Below, piece by piece: positions 5,293 to 63,999 of a DNA stretch of 64,000 nucleotides. The DNA is from Podarcis liolepis. Lineage: Eukaryota. The DNA is taken from assembly GCA_965112155.1 (NCBI GenBank), contig OZ218105.1, one strand, 5' to 3'. Position 1 is the stretch's first letter, and each line of letters begins with the position of its first letter. The notes under the pieces were generated by a model. It saw only the letters and a program-made list of their open reading frames with translations, was not told the origin of the DNA and did not search any database. A program made the position numbers and the translations under genes.

Positions 5293-32930
<27,638 letters not shown>

Positions 32931-54726: not shown

Positions 54727-55204
54727 ATAGAATCGTAGACTTGTAGAGTTGAAAGGGACCACAAGGAATGTCTAGTCCAGGGATAGGCACCTAAGGCCCG
54801 TGGGCTGGATGCGGCCCAATCGCCTTCTCAATCCGGCCCACGGACGTTCCAGGAATCAGTGTGTTTTTACATGAGTAGAATGTGTGCTTTTATTTAAAAT
54901 GCATCTCTGGGTTATTTGTGGGGCCTGCCTGGTGTTTTTACATGAGTAGAATGTGTGCTTTTATTTAAAATGCATCTCTGGATTATTTGTGGGGCATAGG
55001 AATTCATTCATTCCCCCCCCCCCAATATAGTCCAGCCCACCACATGGTCTGAGGGTTGGTGGACCAGCCCACGGCTGAAAAGGGTTGCTGACCCCAGTCT
55101 AGTCCAACCTCCTGCAATACAGGAATCTTTGGCTCATTGTGGGGTTTGAACCCACAACTCTGAGATTGAGAGTCTCATACTCTACCAACTGAGCTATCCC
55201 AACC
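54727..55204 (-). mobile_element. tRNA-Lys-derived SINE with CR1-type 3' tail (interrupted by hAT MITE)
   Basis: Minus strand: gatagctcagttggtagagtatgagactctcaatctcagagttgtgggttcaaacccc...ggactaga...ccctttcaactctac. Confidence 0.78.
54778..55096. mobile_element. hAT MITE with internal ~70-bp tandem duplication, inserted in a tRNA/CR1 SINE
   Basis: Perfect TSD gtctagtc; reverse-complement similarity to 21036-21299. Confidence 0.85.
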
Positions 55205-57390: not shown

Positions 57391-57560
57391 ACTATGGGTT
57401 TGTGGAAGTTGTAGTACAGCAACATAGGGAGGACACCCTGTTGGCTATACCTGGTCTATAGTCTGGAAGGATCATTCTCCAAATATATAATTGGGGACCA
57501 TATATTTACAGATTATATCTCTTCAACTGACTGCTTATGAAACCATAACTGTCTCATATA

Positions 57561-57796
57561 CAATGGAACCTCGGTTGCCAAATGTAATCCGTTCCGGAAG
57601 AAAGACCATTTGACTTTCGAAATGTTCGACAACTGAGGATCAATGGGCTGGCTGCAAAGTCAATGGGGGAAAAAATAAAAATGCACCCCAGAAGCCATTT
57701 GACTTCCAAGGCACGTTTGAAAACAGAAGCAATTACTTCCAGGTTTTTGGCGTTCAGGTTCCGAATTGTTCGGCTTCCGAGACGCTCGAAAACTGA
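57561..57796. mobile_element. Tigger-like MITE truncated by assembly gap
   Basis: TA-caatggaacctcgg...taatccgttccggaag; right TIR not visible. Confidence 0.7.
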
Positions 57797-57932
57797 NNNN
57801 NNNNNNNNNNNNNNNNNNNNNNNNNNNNNNNNNNNNNNNNNNNNNNNNNNNNNNNNNNNNNNNNNNNNNNNNNNNNNNNNNNNNNNNNNNNNNNNNNNNN
57901 NNNNNNNNNNNNNNNNNNNNNNNNNNNNNNNN
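57797..57932. other. Assembly gap (136 N)
   Basis: run of N. Confidence 1.
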
Positions 57933-59606
57933 TGTCTTCCCGTGTAAGAGTTGGGGTGTCTAGGCGACGTTTCGACGAGGTCTCACTCGTCATCTTCAGG
58001 CTGGAGCTTTCGGCTTCTTGTTACTGGAACAGAGCAGGATCTCAGTGTTTGAGTTCCTATAAATACTGTTGAGGGGGTGTGGTGTATAGCCTCCAACGTT
58101 CTGGGCAGAGAGGAAGTTCCCAGGTTAGTGTGCCTTTTCTTCCTTAATTACTTGAGGGATATCTTGAGTGATTTCTTGAGTGATATTCTGAGTACCACTT
58201 AGGTGGGTCATTAAGTGTGGATTAGTTGCTAAAGCTTTCGTGTCTTGACCTCTTGAGCTTGTGAAGAGTTTTTCTGAGAAGATGGCTGTACTGCACTTAG
58301 TTGTGCTCTGGCTTGGCTTCGTGTATAGGGGCGAGCTGTGGTTTTGTGCCCTGTGCCAGCCAGATCTGTGTAGGGATTGCAGGGGGGTGCAGCATCCGGA
58401 GGTGCCACTATGGTTTGGCTACTGGATGGTGTCTGTAATTTATCTGTGGAGAGGGTCTGGGTTTGGGTCTGGTGTGGTTGATTGGTGATGGCGTTCTGTG
58501 TGCCTCTGGTTCTGGTGTCGGTTTTTGTGGGGAGGGCTAATTTCCAGATGTCTGGCAGGCGGGACGTGTCGTCACGCTTGTTCATGTTGTGAGGGTGTTT
58601 CTCTATCTCGATGGCTTCCATGATTATTCTCTTGTGGTGATGTTCCATGTTAAAGAGCAATTTGGAATCTGCAAAATTAATTTCGTGTCCTGTTTCTTTC
58701 ATGTGTTGGAAAAGAGAGGAAGTTTTTTCTTCTTTTTTGACGGCATTCTTGTGTTCTGCGATACGTGCATTTATTCGTCTGTTTGTTTGTCCAATGTACG
58801 TGGCTGGGCAGACTTTGCAGGGTATTTCATAGACCCCTTGGTTTTCCAACTGGATTTTATCTTTGGGGTTTCTGAGGATATTGGCTATTTTTTGGTTGGT
58901 GCAAAAGGCTGTTTTGATATTGTGTTTATGGAGGATTTTGCTAATTTTATCTGTAGTGCCCTTGATATAAGGAAGGAGGGCCATGCCATTGTTTTCTTCT
59001 GTGTCTTGGTTTTTGGGGGGTGTTTCTTTTTGGATTAGCTTCGTAACCCTGTTTTGCTGGTATCCATTGGCGATTAACACATTTGAGAGATTCTGTAACT
59101 CAGTTGTCAAGTGGTCTTTGTCAGCCAGGCGTTTGGTTCTGGAGATGAGAGTCTTGGCTACGGAGTTTATTTGTGCAGGGTGGTGGTGTGATTGTGCATG
59201 TAAGTAGCGGTTGGTGTGTGTTTTTTTCCGGTAGATAGTGTGTCCTAGGGAGCCATCAGGTTTTTTGTAGATTAGGACGTCAAGGAAGGGAAGTTGGTTG
59301 TTGGCTTCTATTTCCATAGTGAATTGTATTTTGGGGTGTAGGCTGTTGAGATGTGTGAGGAAGCTATCTAGTTTTTCTTTCCCGTGTGGCCAAATTACAA
59401 AGGTGTCGTCAACATATCTGAGCCAAAGTTTGGGTTTGTGTTCTGACTTGTCTAAAGCATTGGTTTCAAAGTGTTCCATGTACAAATTTGCGATGACCGG
59501 TGAGAGGGGTGATCCCATAGGTGCTCCTTCTATCTGTTTGTATCTTTGTCCATTGTGGATGAAGTACGTGTTGGTTAGGCAGTGGTTGGTCAGGTCCAGG
59601 ATGTAT
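57933..59606 (-). mobile_element. Penelope-like element (Poseidon-type), 5'-truncated, left arm of palindrome
   Basis: RT motifs GAPMGSPLSPVIANLYM, WLRYVDDTF, LPFLDV, YRKKTHT and GIY-YIG GVYEIPC..CPATYIGQT..RIAEH..EAIEI..MN, with no Cys-rich linker. 3' end runs into the gap. Confidence 0.95.
57959..58006 (-). ncRNA. Minimal type I hammerhead ribozyme motif (mirror copy in left arm)
   Basis: Identical to 61215-61262 on the minus strand. Confidence 0.75.
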
Positions 59607-59620
59607 CCCCCCGAATACAT
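58229..59620 (-). CDS. Open frame: C-terminal half of PLE reverse transcriptase + GIY-YIG endonuclease + low-complexity tail (463 aa from junction ATG)
   Basis: ORF track 58229..59923 is stop-free. The part upstream of 59620 is antisense of the right arm. RT motif A is absent. Confidence 0.7.
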   Translation of the reverse strand: MYSGGYILDLTNHCLTNTYFIHNGQRYKQIEGAPMGSPLSPVIANLYMEHFETNALDKSEHKPKLWLRYVDDTFVIWPHGKEKLDSFLTHLNSLHPKIQFTMEIEANNQLPFLDVLIYKKPDGSLGHTIYRKKTHTNRYLHAQSHHHPAQINSVAKTLISRTKRLADKDHLTTELQNLSNVLIANGYQQNRVTKLIQKETPPKNQDTEENNGMALLPYIKGTTDKISKILHKHNIKTAFCTNQKIANILRNPKDKIQLENQGVYEIPCKVCPATYIGQTNRRINARIAEHKNAVKKEEKTSSLFQHMKETGHEINFADSKLLFNMEHHHKRIIMEAIEIEKHPHNMNKRDDTSRLPDIWKLALPTKTDTRTRGTQNAITNQPHQTQTQTLSTDKLQTPSSSQTIVAPPDAAPPCNPYTDLAGTGHKTTARPYTRSQARAQLSAVQPSSQKNSSQAQEVKTRKL

Positions 59621-61338
59621 CCTGGACCTGACCAGCCACTGCCTAACCAACACGTACTTCATCCACAATGGACAAAGATACAAACAGATAGAAGGAGCAC
59701 CTATGGGATCACCCCTCTCACCGGTCATCGCAAATTTGTACATGGAACACTTTGAAACCAATGCTTTAGACAAGTCAGAACACAAACCCAAACTTTGGCT
59801 CAGATATGTTGACGACACCTTTGTAATTTGGCCACACGGGAAAGAAAAACTAGATAGCTTCCTCACACATCTCAACAGCCTACACCCCAAAATACAATTC
59901 ACTATGGAAATAGAAGCCAACAACCAACTTCCCTTCCTTGACGTCCTAATCTACAAAAAACCTGATGGCTCCCTAGGACACACTATCTACCGGAAAAAAA
60001 CACACACCAACCGCTACTTACATGCACAATCACACCACCACCCTGCATAAATAAACTCCGTAGCCAAGACTCTCATCTCCAGAACCAAACGCCTGGCTGA
60101 CAAAGACCACTTGACAACTGAGTTACAGAATCTCTCAAATGTGTTAATCGCCAATGGATACCAGCAAAACAGGGTTACGAAGCTAATCCAAAAAGAAACA
60201 CCCCCCAAAAACCAAGACACAGAAGAAAACAATGGCATGGCCCTCCTTCCTTATATCAAGGGCACTACAGATAAAATTAGCAAAATCCTCCATAAACACA
60301 ATATCAAAACAGCCTTTTGCACCAACCAAAAAATAGCCAATATCCTCAGAAACCCCAAAGATAAAATCCAGTTGGAAAACCAAGGGGTCTATGAAATACC
60401 CTGCAAAGTCTGCCCAGCCACGTACATTGGACAAACAAACAGACGAATAAATGCACGTATCGCAGAACACAAGAATGCCGTCAAAAAAGAAGAAAAAACT
60501 TCCTCTCTTTTCCAACACATGAAAGAAACAGGACACGAAATTAATTTTGCAGATTCCAAATTGCTCTTTAACATGGAACATCACCACAAGAGAATAATCA
60601 TGGAAGCCATCGAGATAGAGAAACACCCTCACAACATGAACAAGCGTGACGACACGTCCCGCCTGCCAGACATCTGGAAATTAGCCCTCCCCACAAAAAC
60701 CGACACCAGAACCAGAGGCACACAGAACGCCATCACCAATCAACCACACCAGACCCAAACCCAGACCCTCTCCACAGATAAATTACAGACACCATCCAGT
60801 AGCCAAACCATAGTGGCACCTCCGGATGCTGCACCCCCCTGCAATCCCTACACAGATCTGGCTGGCACAGGGCACAAAACCACAGCTCGCCCCTATACAC
60901 GAAGCCAAGCCAGAGCACAACTAAGTGCAGTACAGCCATCTTCTCAGAAAAACTCTTCACAAGCTCAAGAGGTCAAGACACGAAAGCTTTAGCAACTAAT
61001 CCACACTTAATGACCCACCTAAGTGGTACTCAGAATATCACTCAAGAAATCACTCAAGATATCCCTCAAGTAATTAAGGAAGAAAAGGCACACTAACCTG
61101 GGAACTTCCTCTCTGCCCAGAACGTTGGAGGCTATACACCACACCCCCTCAACAGTATTTATAGGAACTCAAACACTGAGATCCTGCTCTGTTCCAGTAA
61201 CAAGAAGCCGAAAGCTCCAGCCTGAAGATGACGAGTGAGACCTCGTCGAAACGTCGCCTAGACACCCCAACTCTTACACGGGAAGACACCCGAAGACACC
61301 AAAACCTGCATTCCTGTACCCGTGAAAATCTACGAAAG

Positions 61339-61341
<3 letters not shown>
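59607..61341 (+). mobile_element. Penelope-like element (Poseidon-type), 5'-truncated, right arm of palindrome, nonsense mutation at 60048
   Basis: Reverse complement of the left arm. CAA>TAA splits the ORF (59601-60050 and 60051-60992). Ends in (AT)n. Confidence 0.95.
61215..61262 (+). ncRNA. Minimal type I hammerhead ribozyme motif (PLE 3' terminal repeat)
   Basis: CTGAAGA-T-GACGAG(tgagac)CTCGTC-GAAA-CGTC. Palindromic ACGT helix III, GUC cleavage triplet, weak helix I. Confidence 0.75.

Positions 61342-61391
<50 letters not shown>
61342..61391. repeat. (AT)n microsatellite abutting PLE 3' end
   Basis: direct reading. Confidence 0.95.
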
Positions 61392-61395
<4 letters not shown>

Positions 61396-61916
61396 AAGAG
61401 ATGGAGAGAGGGGGAGATAAAGGGGAGGGGGAGATAAAGGGGAGGGGGAGTGCTACAAGCAGACAGAAACATGGGAGAAAGGAACTCAGAAAGAACATTA
61501 TTAATATTTATTTATTTAGCACCATTATCAGTCTTGGGCTGATTAACATCCTATACTCCTTTAAAGATGTTTGTGAAAGCGGGTTGGGGGTGAGGTCTTA
61601 CTGATTTGTTTTGTTCTTATTCTTTTTATTGTGGATTTTGTGTTTTCAGCTGGTGTCTTTATGCTGCGAACCACCCTGAGATCTATAAGTGAAGGGCAAT
61701 ATACACATTTAAAATGAAATAATGTACATGGTACTTTACAAAGAATGCGGGTCTGTACTCAAAGGGGCTCACAATATTGAAAAAAGATGCATGTGAGACT
61801 ACAGAGGAAGTGGGAAATGAAGGCAGACAAAGACAGGGGAATACTACTTCAGTTACTTAGTCAAAATAAAAAATTCCTTCCAGTAGCACCTTAAAGACCA
61901 ACTAAGTTAGTTCTTG

Positions 61917-61954
61917 GTATGAGCTTTCGTGTGCATGCACACTTCTTCAGATAC
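61917..61954 (-). ncRNA. Minimal type I hammerhead ribozyme motif of Neptune-type PLE
   Basis: gtat-CTGAAGA-a-gtgtgcatgcacac-GAAA-gc-TC-atac. Helix I gtat/atac, palindromic helix II, palindromic AGCT helix III. Confidence 0.85.
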
Positions 61955-62133
61955 ACTGAAATAGAAGTTGCCAGATCCTTCTATATAGTGAGAAGGTGGG
62001 GAGGGGTGTTACTCAGAAGGATGGTGGGAATGGGAGATAGGCAGATAGCTGGGAGAGCCTGTTGACGACTCTTAACGACTGTAATAGGTCTTACAGGAAA
62101 AGGCAAGGGGTGGGAAGGTGAGAAATGGTTTAG

Positions 62134-63999
62134 TTATGTATAGTGAGATAAGAATCCAATGTCTTTGTTAAGCCCAGGTCTTTTCATGGTTTTAAGTTTG
62201 GTAATGAGTTGTAATTCAGCAGCTTCTCTTTCCAGTCTATTTCTGAAATTCCTTTGTAGTAAAACAGCTACTTTGAGATCTTGTATAGAATGCCCTGGGA
62301 GATTGAAGTGTTCTCCTACTGGTTTCTCTGTTCTGTGATTCTTGATGTCAGATTTATGTCCGTTTATTCTTTGGCGTAAGGTTTGGCCTGTTTGTCCAAT
62401 ATAGAGAGCTGAAGGACACTGTTGGCATTTGATGGCATACACAATGTTAGACGATGAGCAATTAAATAGTCCCGAGATGGTATGTGTGATGTTGTTGGGG
62501 CCAGTAATGGTGTTGTCCGGGTGTATGTGGCAGCAAAGTTGGCATCTGGGTTTATTGCAGGCTCTGGTGCCAGTGTCTGTGTTAAGTCTGGTTGTAGTAT
62601 TATTGTGGGTTAGGAGTTGTTTAAGATTGGGTGGCTGTCTGTAGGCAATGAAAGGTCTTCCTCCCAGAGCTTGAGAAAGAGAACTGTCATTGTCCAGGAG
62701 AGGTTGTAGATCTCTGATGATGCGTTGTACTGTTTTAACTTGGGAGCTGTATGTGATGACTAGAGGTGTTCTGTTATTTTCTTTTTTGGGTCTGTCTTGC
62801 AGCAAGTTCTCTCTGGGTATCAGTCTGGCTCTGTTGATCTGTTGTCTAACTTCATCTGCTGGGTATTTTAGTTCTGAGAAGGTTTGCTGTAGATCCCTTA
62901 GGTGAGAGTCTCTGTCTGTAGAATTGGAACAGATGCGGCTGTAACGTAGTGCCTGGCTATATACAATGGACTGTTTGGTATGTTTGGGATGGTAGCTAGA
63001 GGCATGTAGATATGTTTGTCGGTCAGTTGGTTTGCGGTATAAGGTGGTGTCTATGCGCCCATCCTGTATTTTTATAGTAGTGTCCAAAAAATGTATTTCT
63101 TGCATAGATTGATTCATTGTAAGGTTGATTGTGGGGTGAAAATCATTGAATTTCTGGTGAAAGGTGTCCAGGGTCTGTTGACCATGTGTCCAGATGATAA
63201 AAATATCATCAATGTATCGCAGGTACAAGAGAGGTTTGAGTGGGTAGGAGTTCAGGAAACGTTGTTCTAAATCTGCCATGAAGATGTTGGCATACTGTGG
63301 GGCCATGCGGGTGCCCATTGCTGTGCCGCTGATCTGAAGAAACAGGTCATCACCGAATTTGAAGTTGTTGTGGGTAAGGACAAATTGGCAGAGTTTGGTG
63401 GCAAGGTCCGCTGTGGTTTTATCTGATATGGTGTTCCTTATGGCTTGTAAACCATCGTTGTGTGGGATGTTGGTGTACAGAGATTCCACATCCATAGTAG
63501 CTAGTATAGTGTTGTCGGGAAGATTATTTAAAGATTGTATTTTCCTCAGAAAATCTGTGGTGTCACGTACATAGCTGGGAGCATTGATGGCATATGGTTT
63601 CAGAACAGAGTCCATATAACCGGAGACACCCACTGTAACAGTGCCAATACCTGAAATGATGGGGCGTCCTGGATTTCCTGGTTTGTGTATTTTGGGTAGA
63701 AGATAGAAAGTTCCTGGTCGAGGTTCTGTTGGTGTGTTGGTGAGGATCTGTTCTTGGATGTGTGGGGGTAGCTCCTTAACAATCTTGTTTAGTTCTTTCT
63801 TGTATTCTTGTGTGGGGTCTGAGTCCAATTTTGTGTAAAAGGCGGTATTGGAAAGTTGTTTGTGAGCCTCCTGAATGTAGTCAGTTTTGTTCATGATGAC
63901 GACAGCTCCACCTTTGTCTGCTTCTTTAATTATAATGTCTGGGTTGTTTCTGAGATTATTTATGGCTCTCCTTTCAGCATGGTTTAGATTTTGTTGTAA
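62134..63999 (-). CDS. Neptune-type PLE polyprotein RT + GIY-YIG endonuclease (5' part outside window)
   Basis: Stop-free for at least 621 codons: ADKGGAVV, YLLPKIHK, GRPIIS, MDVESLYTNI, GTAMGTRMAP, YLRYIDDIF, FLDT, YRKPTD, IVYAIKCQQC..YIGQT..RINGH, RE..LI, GLN. Confidence 0.92.
   Translation of the reverse strand, partial: LQQNLNHAERRAINNLRNNPDIIIKEADKGGAVVIMNKTDYIQEAHKQLSNTAFYTKLDSDPTQEYKKELNKIVKELPPHIQEQILTNTPTEPRPGTFYLLPKIHKPGNPGRPIISGIGTVTVGVSGYMDSVLKPYAINAPSYVRDTTDFLRKIQSLNNLPDNTILATMDVESLYTNIPHNDGLQAIRNTISDKTTADLATKLCQFVLTHNNFKFGDDLFLQISGTAMGTRMAPQYANIFMADLEQRFLNSYPLKPLLYLRYIDDIFIIWTHGQQTLDTFHQKFNDFHPTINLTMNQSMQEIHFLDTTIKIQDGRIDTTLYRKPTDRQTYLHASSYHPKHTKQSIVYSQALRYSRICSNSTDRDSHLRDLQQTFSELKYPADEVRQQINRARLIPRENLLQDRPKKENNRTPLVITYSSQVKTVQRIIRDLQPLLDNDSSLSQALGGRPFIAYRQPPNLKQLLTHNNTTTRLNTDTGTRACNKPRCQLCCHIHPDNTITGPNNITHTISGLFNCSSSNIVYAIKCQQCPSALYIGQTGQTLRQRINGHKSDIKNHRTEKPVGEHFNLPGHSIQDLKVAVLLQRNFRNRLEREAAELQLITKLKTMKRPGLNKDIGFLSHYT

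What the first reader, a model, noticed from the sequence alone, without database searches (positions are those of the whole stretch)
57933..61288. 3.36-kb near-perfect head-to-head palindrome built from one 5'-truncated Penelope retroelement, with a hammerhead motif at each end
Seen: 57933-59606 and 59615-61288 are reverse complements of identical length (1674 bp, no net indel) around an 8-nt spacer (ccccccga). Only two differences were noticed by eye (59586/59635 and 59173/60048). Both would be G.U wobbles in a plus-strand transcript, so that RNA could fold into an essentially fully paired ~1.7-kb hairpin. Both PLE 3' ends face outward. Known: PLEs often carry partial-tandem or inverted terminal copies. 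Inference: this is one integration event via a fold-back (self-primed hairpin) cDNA, giving a symmetric two-tailed insertion with no internal single-copy body. It would be a strong source of dsRNA/endo-siRNA able to silence the family in trans, an ADAR substrate, and a cruciform/fragile site about 11 kb upstream of the SDCBP promoter. Perfect palindromes of this length are usually unstable, which suggests a very young insertion.
Basis: partly seen in the sequence, partly recalled or inferred. Interest (0 to 1): 0.88.

Follow-up and report, generated by a model that had tools for sequence, protein, structure and literature searches.

The report
Fold-back palindrome of a Penelope retroelement
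Two mirror-image copies of the same broken Penelope-like jumping gene sit head to head in a lizard genome; this layout is already described for these elements, so the locus is ordinary, and its left edge is hidden under a run of N.

Summary
57933-59606 and 59615-61288 are reverse complements of 1674 nt each, with two mismatches and the 8-nt spacer CCCCCCGA. Each arm encodes the C-terminal part of a reverse transcriptase plus a GIY-YIG endonuclease. It is 98% identical to a Podarcis muralis Penelope-like ORF and is followed by a minimal hammerhead core.

The "identical length" is not biological. The left arm starts on the first base after the N run 57797-57932, so its outer end is unseen.

The spacer is native element sequence (codons PPE) belonging to the right arm. 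The geometry is therefore a snap-back: the left arm restarts 8 nt inside the right arm's 5' end.

Published work already describes head-to-head inverted 5'-truncated Penelope copies with palindromic junctions, attributes them to self-priming, and notes a one-sided "tail" and a microsatellite target bias. All of this fits here.

It is weakened, because the window's other N run sits where a conserved exon is expected and looks like a deliberate mask rather than a gap.

First-reader notes, unchecked, list many other Penelope palindromes elsewhere in this genome.

Verdict: probably real, and a new member of a known kind. The dsRNA, ADAR, fragile-site and age claims are untested.

The parts
57797..57932 (.). 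N run of 136 nt that hides the outer end of the left arm and the left insertion junction. Whether it is an assembly gap or a deliberate mask is unknown.
   Evidence: The window's other N run (16396-16533) sits exactly where a BEACH-domain exon is missing, so it looks like a mask.
57933..59606 (-). Left arm: the Penelope-like element with its sense on the minus strand. Its ORF is open from the centre to the stop at 58229-58231. The RVT_1 match is at about 59342-59569 and the GIY-YIG match at about 58718-58837. It carries the ancestral residue at both arm differences.
57966..57999 (-). Minimal hammerhead core of the left arm, on the minus strand.
   Evidence: descriptor: 3 hits against 0.04 expected. 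No Rfam hit.
59607..59614 (+). 8-nt spacer CCCCCCGA. It is native element sequence (codons of PPE in ...KYNPPEYILDLT...) and continues the right arm 5'-wards. It forms the loop of the snap-back.
   Evidence: alignment of the plus-strand junction ORF with P0001 residues 240-242.
59615..61288 (+). Right arm: the same element with its sense on the plus strand. The RVT_1 match is at about 59649-59882 and the GIY-YIG match at about 60384-60503. The ORF stops at 60990-60992.
60048..60050 (+). Premature TAA stop in the right arm only. The left arm and all related proteins have Gln at this position. This is one of the two arm differences.
61222..61255 (+). Minimal hammerhead core of the right arm: CUGAAGA, a bulged U, a 6-bp helix II, GAAA, CG, UC.
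   Evidence: The architecture is as described for Penelope hammerheads in PMC4209133.
61289..61339 (+). 51 nt between the end of the visible symmetry and the microsatellite. It is either the last part of the element's 3' end or the one-sided 'tail' described for these elements.
   Evidence: The 'tail' is described in PMC8557442 and PMC3846280. The assignment is an inference.
61342..61391 (.). (AT)25 microsatellite abutting the right end. It is the likely target site.
   Evidence: The microsatellite insertion bias of these elements is reported in PMC8557442.

Best explanation
This is most likely a genuine, dead insertion of a Penelope/Poseidon-type retroelement made in one event by snap-back self-priming.

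Inferred sequence of events:
1. Reverse transcription started at the right-hand target, next to the (AT)n tract.
2. It copied the element's 3' 1.73 kb as minus-strand cDNA up to about 59607, inside the RT domain.
3. The 3' end of that cDNA folded back over an 8-nt loop, with at most 2 nt (AT) of microhomology.
4. It then copied itself back to the 3' end.
5. After second-strand synthesis, the hairpin strand became a head-to-head palindrome.

Both copies lack at least the first ~240 residues of the ORF, so neither can encode an active enzyme.

Shown: the sequence anatomy, the element's identity, and the native origin of the loop. Inferred: the order of events and that the structure exists in the animal. 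Any RNA-level role (hairpin dsRNA) is possible only if the locus is transcribed, and that was not tested.
For: 1. Both arms are the same segment of one element: RT C-terminus plus GIY-YIG, 98% identical to Podarcis muralis P0001.
2. The inner ends of the two copies differ by only 8 nt, and those 8 nt are native sequence of one arm. This is what self-priming gives and what two independent truncations would almost never give.
3. All visible arm sequence is element sequence. The symmetry stops within 51 nt of an (AT)25 tract, and left of the N run there is no mirror image.
4. The literature describes this arrangement. [quoted passage not shown] 5. P0001, a gene model at another locus, starts with 37 residues that are the antisense reading of the same RT region and then joins sense element sequence. 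So the family forms head-to-head pairs elsewhere too.
6. The window's other N run looks like a mask, not a gap. This removes much of the reason to suspect a contig end here.
7. As leads only: unchecked scan notes list Penelope palindromes from 93 bp to 4.4 kb elsewhere in this genome.
Against:
- The left arm is flush with an N run, which is also what a fold-back artefact at a contig start looks like.
- The left junction, any target-site duplication and the true outer end are hidden.
- Both arm differences are derived in the right arm, which this model takes as the template. The model would place copying errors in the left arm. With two sites this is not informative, and both may be later mutations.
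- The element's true 3' end was not defined, because the window holds no other copy of the family.
Confidence: 0.7

Rival explanations
1. Assembly artefact. The genome holds one 5'-truncated or longer Penelope copy at 59607-61340. A fold-back chimeric long read, or a gap-filling step, added its reverse complement to the start of a contig.
For: - The left arm begins on the first base after an N run.
- The arms have no indels and only two substitutions, about the level expected from heterozygous sites.
- The literature warns that these elements disturb assemblies.
Against: - A chimeric read would run on into the mirror image of the unique right flank for an arbitrary distance. Here the copy stops within 51 nt of the element/microsatellite boundary.
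- The centre has an asymmetric native 8-nt loop rather than a blunt or adapter-like join.
- The window's other N run is probably a mask over an exon, so this N run need not be a contig end.
- The same layout is a documented hallmark of this element class.
Confidence: 0.2
2. Two independent cDNAs. The element's endonuclease cut both target strands, and each 3'-OH primed its own reverse transcript (dual or twin priming). The two 5'-truncated copies were then joined head to head.
For: The Anolis Penelope protein PAc cleaves and extends both strands of its target in vitro (PMC11167929). Both 3' ends face outward.
Against: Two independent truncations would have to fall within 8 nt of each other in an element of several kb. 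That happens by construction in a snap-back and only by coincidence here.
Confidence: 0.05
3. Post-insertion rearrangement. An ordinary 5'-truncated copy was later duplicated in inverted orientation, by a replication template switch or by hairpin repair of a break at 59607.
For: Short or absent microhomology and a small loop at the centre are also typical of fold-back inversions (my own knowledge).
Against: Such events are not expected to stop at the element's boundary, yet the visible arms contain element sequence only. They would also not explain why the layout recurs in this element class.
Confidence: 0.05

Closest known systems
Inverted 5'-truncated copies and head-to-head inverted repeats of endonuclease-containing Penelope-like elements (Arkhipova et al. 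2013, PMC3846280; Craig et al. 2021, PMC8557442)
   Same: Same element class (RT plus C-terminal GIY-YIG, with a hammerhead core in the 3' region). Same head-to-head orientation, a palindromic junction, a one-sided extension, a microsatellite at the target, and self-priming as the proposed cause.
   Different: The textbook layout puts the inverted truncated copy next to a full or tandem unit with pseudo-LTRs. Here both copies are truncated at the same point inside the RT domain, so there is no complete unit and no direct repeat.
Hairpin self-priming of first-strand cDNA by reverse transcriptases, the classical route to second-strand cDNA (my own knowledge)
   Same: The 3' end of the cDNA loops back over a few nucleotides and primes a copy of itself.
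   Different: That is an in-vitro observation with retroviral enzymes. Here the product would have to be integrated and unfolded in the germ line.
LINE-1 twin priming (5' inversions) (my own knowledge)
   Same: Inverted retroelement segments made during one target-primed insertion.
   Different: Twin priming joins different, adjacent parts of the RNA. Here the two arms are the same segment, so the defining feature is not met.
Fold-back chimeric reads or inverted duplications at contig ends in long-read assemblies (my own knowledge)
   Same: A near-perfect inverted duplicate flush with an N run.
   Different: The arms are confined to one transposon, the loop is native and asymmetric, and it is not shown that the N run is a gap.
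Hairpin-RNA (hpRNA) loci that yield endogenous siRNAs in flies and mouse oocytes (my own knowledge)
   Same: A long inverted repeat that would fold into a perfect hairpin if transcribed.
   Different: No transcription or small-RNA evidence exists for this locus.

Membership tests
Penelope-like elements, endonuclease-containing (Penelope/Poseidon type) | Penelope-type reverse transcriptase | tested here: met
   RVT_1 at E=2e-8 and 6e-9, above the Pfam cut-off. 98% identity over 450 aa to a lizard Penelope-like ORF; thousands of RT plus GIY-YIG relatives. Only the C-terminal part of the RT is present.
Penelope-like elements, endonuclease-containing (Penelope/Poseidon type) | C-terminal GIY-YIG endonuclease | tested here: met
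   Pfam GIY-YIG at 20.9 bits, just under the 22.6 cut-off. The domain aligns with the GIY-YIG of the neighbouring element, which passes the cut-off at 25.4 bits.
Penelope-like elements, endonuclease-containing (Penelope/Poseidon type) | Hammerhead motif in the terminal repeat or 3' region | tested here: met
   The core with a 6-bp helix II was found once per arm. The architecture is as in PMC4209133. Rfam models do not detect it.
Penelope-like elements, endonuclease-containing (Penelope/Poseidon type) | Pseudo-LTRs (partial tandem direct repeats) | tested here: not met
   No direct repeat in 56-63 kb. This feature is typical but not obligatory; solo 5'-truncated and inverted forms are described.
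Penelope-like elements, endonuclease-containing (Penelope/Poseidon type) | Target-site duplication or defined junctions | not testable with these tools
   The left junction lies under the N run 57797-57932.
Hammerhead ribozyme (type I) | Conserved core CUGANGA...GAAA...UH with helices I-III, and self-cleavage | tested here: inconclusive
   The core and helix II are present. Helix III is a single A-U pair around a CG loop, so it would need a dimer. Helix I has at most 3 bp. There is no Rfam match. Cleavage is not testable. In one transcript only one arm carries the sense motif.
Fold-back assembly artefact | The inverted copy sits at a true contig end and lacks support from independent reads | not testable with these tools
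The nature of the N run is unknown, and the other N run looks like a mask.
Fold-back assembly artefact | The inverted copy ignores repeat boundaries and runs into the mirror image of unique flank | tested here: not met
   The visible arm is element sequence only. There is no mirror image left of the N run. At most 85 nt of non-element sequence could be hidden.
LINE-type twin priming | The inverted and direct segments derive from different, adjoining parts of the template | tested here: not met
   Both arms are the same 1674 nt.

The most novel reading that the evidence does not exclude
In this lizard lineage the Penelope family turns out fold-back palindromes systematically, from under 100 bp to over 4 kb. 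Transcribed copies such as this one would then act as hairpin-RNA loci that feed small-RNA silencing of the family, so the element's own insertion mechanism would generate its repressor.
Probability: 0.1. Interest if true: 0.55.

Novelty: new member of a known kind. Interest (0 to 1): 0.2.

Why it matters
If real, this is a clean, nearly unmutated example of the snap-back product that has been inferred, but never shown mechanistically, for Penelope-like elements. The native 8-nt loop fixes which arm was the template. That detail could help design in-vitro tests with the recently purified lizard Penelope protein. In practice it also warns annotators. Such palindromes give long spurious ORFs across the centre, chimeric gene models (as in P0001), false miRNA hits at the apex, and trouble for assemblers. 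It does not open a new question on its own.

Tried and rejected
- **Metagenome scan.** A scan for the 30-nt centre junction found nothing. This was expected and is not evidence against the junction.
- **Rfam.** No hammerhead family matched in 57.0-62.5 kb at E<=1 or in the whole window at gathering scores. The only hits on the palindrome are miRNA models on the apex (mir-449, 53.5 bits, below its 60.4 cut-off). I reject these as a side effect of any perfect hairpin.
- **Other copies in the window.** blastn of the right arm plus flank against the rest of the window found no other copy of the family, so the element's 3' end could not be defined by comparison.
- **Junction-spanning protein.** None was found in the protein collection. 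No hit covers both halves of the 564-aa ORF apart from the P0001 chimera, which has a different junction. This is uninformative, because short-read unitigs break at a palindrome centre.
- **N runs.** I did not try to infer or fill their letters.
- **Target-site duplication.** No shared word of 6 nt or more was found between the last 40 nt before the N run and 61289-61500.
Full report
**Observation**

The inverted repeat is exactly as described. Arms 57933-59606 and 59615-61288 are 1674 nt each, separated by 8 nt. A base-by-base comparison finds two mismatches: 59173 G against 60048 T, and 59586 T against 59635 G. The spacer is CCCCCCGA. Nothing else in the window comes near it; the next inverted pair is 134 nt at 94%.

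Both mismatches are G.U pairs in a plus-strand RNA and C.A in a minus-strand RNA. The fully paired hairpin evaluates to about -3421 and -3412 kcal/mol respectively.

The important qualification is that the left arm begins on the first base after the N run 57797-57932. The equal length of the arms is therefore set by where readable sequence starts. Left of the N run the mirror image does not resume: identity to the mirror is 25.5%, and the best local score is 11-12. So the symmetry can extend at most about 136 nt further.

**What the arms are**

Each arm encodes the C-terminal part of a reverse transcriptase (Pfam RVT_1, profile positions about 104-176 of 205) followed by a GIY-YIG domain. The ORF is open in the left arm from the centre to 58229. 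In the right arm it is cut by a TAA at 60048-60050.

The best relative is a 735-aa Podarcis muralis protein, P0001, at 98% identity over 450 residues. A viper and an agamid protein follow, and then thousands of RT plus GIY-YIG proteins from many animals. This is an endonuclease-containing Penelope-like element, and the genome is a lacertid lizard or a close relative.

The copies start at P0001 residue 240, so at least the first ~240 residues of the ORF are missing, including the N-terminal RT motifs. Neither copy can be autonomous.

About 230 nt after the ORF stop, each arm has a minimal hammerhead core: CUGAAGA, a bulged U, a 6-bp helix II, GAAA, CG, UC. It lies at 61222-61255 (+) and 57966-57999 (-). 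My descriptor finds three such sites in the window against 0.04 expected in shuffles, and the helix II hairpin appears in the minimum-energy fold. The architecture matches the Penelope hammerhead variants described in PMC4209133: a large helix II with a 5' bulge, a 2-nt palindromic insert in place of helix III, and a short helix I. Rfam models do not detect it. The two motifs lie on opposite strands, so a single transcript would carry only one sense motif.

**The centre**

Read on the plus strand, the junction ORF gives ...RMYPPEYILDLTSH. P0001 has ...KYNPPEYILDLTNH. The 8-nt spacer is therefore native element sequence that continues the right arm towards the 5' end. The left arm is the complement starting 8 nt further in.

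That is the geometry of a strand that ran to about 59607, looped back over 8 nt and copied itself. Up to two further bases (AT at 59605-59606) could be shared microhomology if the native Asn codon is AAT. This cannot be checked here.

At both arm differences the left arm has the residue found in all relatives (Asn, Gln). The right arm has the derived state (Ser, stop). With only two sites this says little.

**Surroundings**

- To the right, 51 nt (61289-61339) separate the end of the visible symmetry from an (AT)25 tract at 61342-61391.
- About 0.6 kb further right lies a second, unrelated Penelope-like element on the minus strand. It has a 586-aa ORF at 62134-63894 with RVT_1 and GIY-YIG, is 27% identical to the palindrome's ORF, and has its own minimal hammerhead at 61950-61917. 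Two different Penelope elements therefore point their 3' ends at the same simple-repeat region.
- The window also holds BEACH-domain exons on the plus strand (14.6-19.9 kb).
- Syntenin-like PDZ exons lie on the minus strand (36-38.6 kb), with a CpG island at 46-47 kb.

**Real or artefact**

The flush N run first made me favour a fold-back artefact at a contig start. Three observations moved me away from that.

1. The window's other N run (16396-16533, 138 nt) starts right after an AG acceptor. It sits exactly where one BEACH-domain exon is missing, between the exon ending ...ERLERLL (16150-16229) and the one reading ...[14 protein letters not shown] (about 17.1 kb). It therefore looks like a deliberate mask, not a gap, and the N run beside the palindrome may be a mask too. 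I did not try to recover any masked letters.
2. A chimeric read would continue for an arbitrary distance into the mirror image of the unique right flank. Instead, all visible arm sequence is element sequence, and the symmetry stops within 51 nt of the element/microsatellite boundary.
3. The loop is asymmetric and native, not blunt or adapter-like.

Independent support comes from P0001. Its first 37 residues are the antisense reading of this same RT region (97% identical to the window's antisense ORF). They are joined to sense element sequence at a different point (DVTNIL...). That means another locus carries head-to-head copies of the same family.

Unchecked first-reader notes list many more Penelope palindromes, from 93 bp to 4.4 kb, elsewhere in this genome. 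I treat these as leads only.

A metagenome scan for the junction was empty.

I put a real structure at about 0.7-0.8 and an artefact at about 0.2.

**Mechanism**

The best reading is a one-step snap-back during target-primed reverse transcription that started at the right-hand (AT)n side.

Dual priming from both target strands is biochemically plausible, since the Anolis Penelope protein cleaves and extends both strands (PMC11167929). But it would need two independent truncations to fall within 8 nt of each other.

A later fold-back duplication would not be expected to respect the element boundary.

**Comparison with what is known**

[quoted passage not shown] It also reports that a 30-40-bp tail is often present at one end only, that the elements prefer microsatellites, and that these structures trouble assemblies.

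PMC3846280 reports that head-to-head is the most frequent inverted arrangement. It also reports that palindromes occur at the inverted junction and that they are best explained by self-priming.

The present locus is a particularly clean and symmetric instance, with both copies truncated at the same internal point and no complete unit. It is an instance of a described kind.

Identity between arms can also be maintained by gene conversion (my own knowledge).

**Verdict**

The structure is probably real, a new member of a known kind, and of low to moderate interest.

Noticed in passing
window 16396-16533: This 138-nt N run begins right after an AG acceptor. It sits exactly where a BEACH-domain exon is missing, between the exon ending ...ERLERLL (16150-16229) and the exon reading ...[14 protein letters not shown] (about 17.1 kb). 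It looks like a deliberately masked conserved exon rather than an assembly gap. The letters were not looked up.
   Followed up: partly
window 61917-63894 (minus strand): A second, unrelated Penelope-like element: a 586-aa ORF with RVT_1 and GIY-YIG and a Cys/His cluster before the endonuclease, 27% identical to the palindrome's ORF. It has its own minimal hammerhead (CUGAAGA, 6-bp helix II, GAAAGCUC) at 61950-61917. Its 3' end points towards the palindrome, so the two are tail to tail across an (AT)25 and GA-rich simple-repeat region.
   Followed up: partly
protein P0001 (Podarcis muralis LOC144326219), not in the window: The annotated protein is a chimera. Residues 1-37 are the antisense translation of the element's RT region, joined to sense Penelope sequence from DVTNIL onwards. 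In the window's copy, the bases after the matching codons read GTCAGG, a plausible splice donor. The gene model therefore probably splices across a head-to-head Penelope pair.
   Followed up: partly
window 59563-59658: Rfam miRNA models (mir-449 at 53.5 bits, also mir-2278 and mir-1490) score on both strands of the palindrome apex, below their gathering scores. This is a side effect of a perfect hairpin, not a miRNA gene.
   Followed up: yes
window 26981-27577: A CpG-rich tandem array with an 89-nt period and at least 5 copies. Its units contain internal 29-31-nt near-perfect palindromes. It lies between the 3' ends of the BEACH-domain gene and the syntenin-like gene.
   Followed up: no
window 21038-21287 and 54789-55095; 12212-12270; 55139-55196: Inverted copies of an interspersed repeat, 87-94% identical and about 33.5 kb apart. 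Partial tRNA-model hits (model positions 8-63) lie at 55139-55196 (-) and 12212-12270 (+). These are probably tRNA-derived SINE heads.
   Followed up: no
window 57540-57796: The sequence immediately left of the N run is made of three related sub-repeats of about 35 nt (ccatttgac...gaaa...). It looks like part of an interspersed repeat, so readable sequence on both sides of the N run is repetitive.
   Followed up: no
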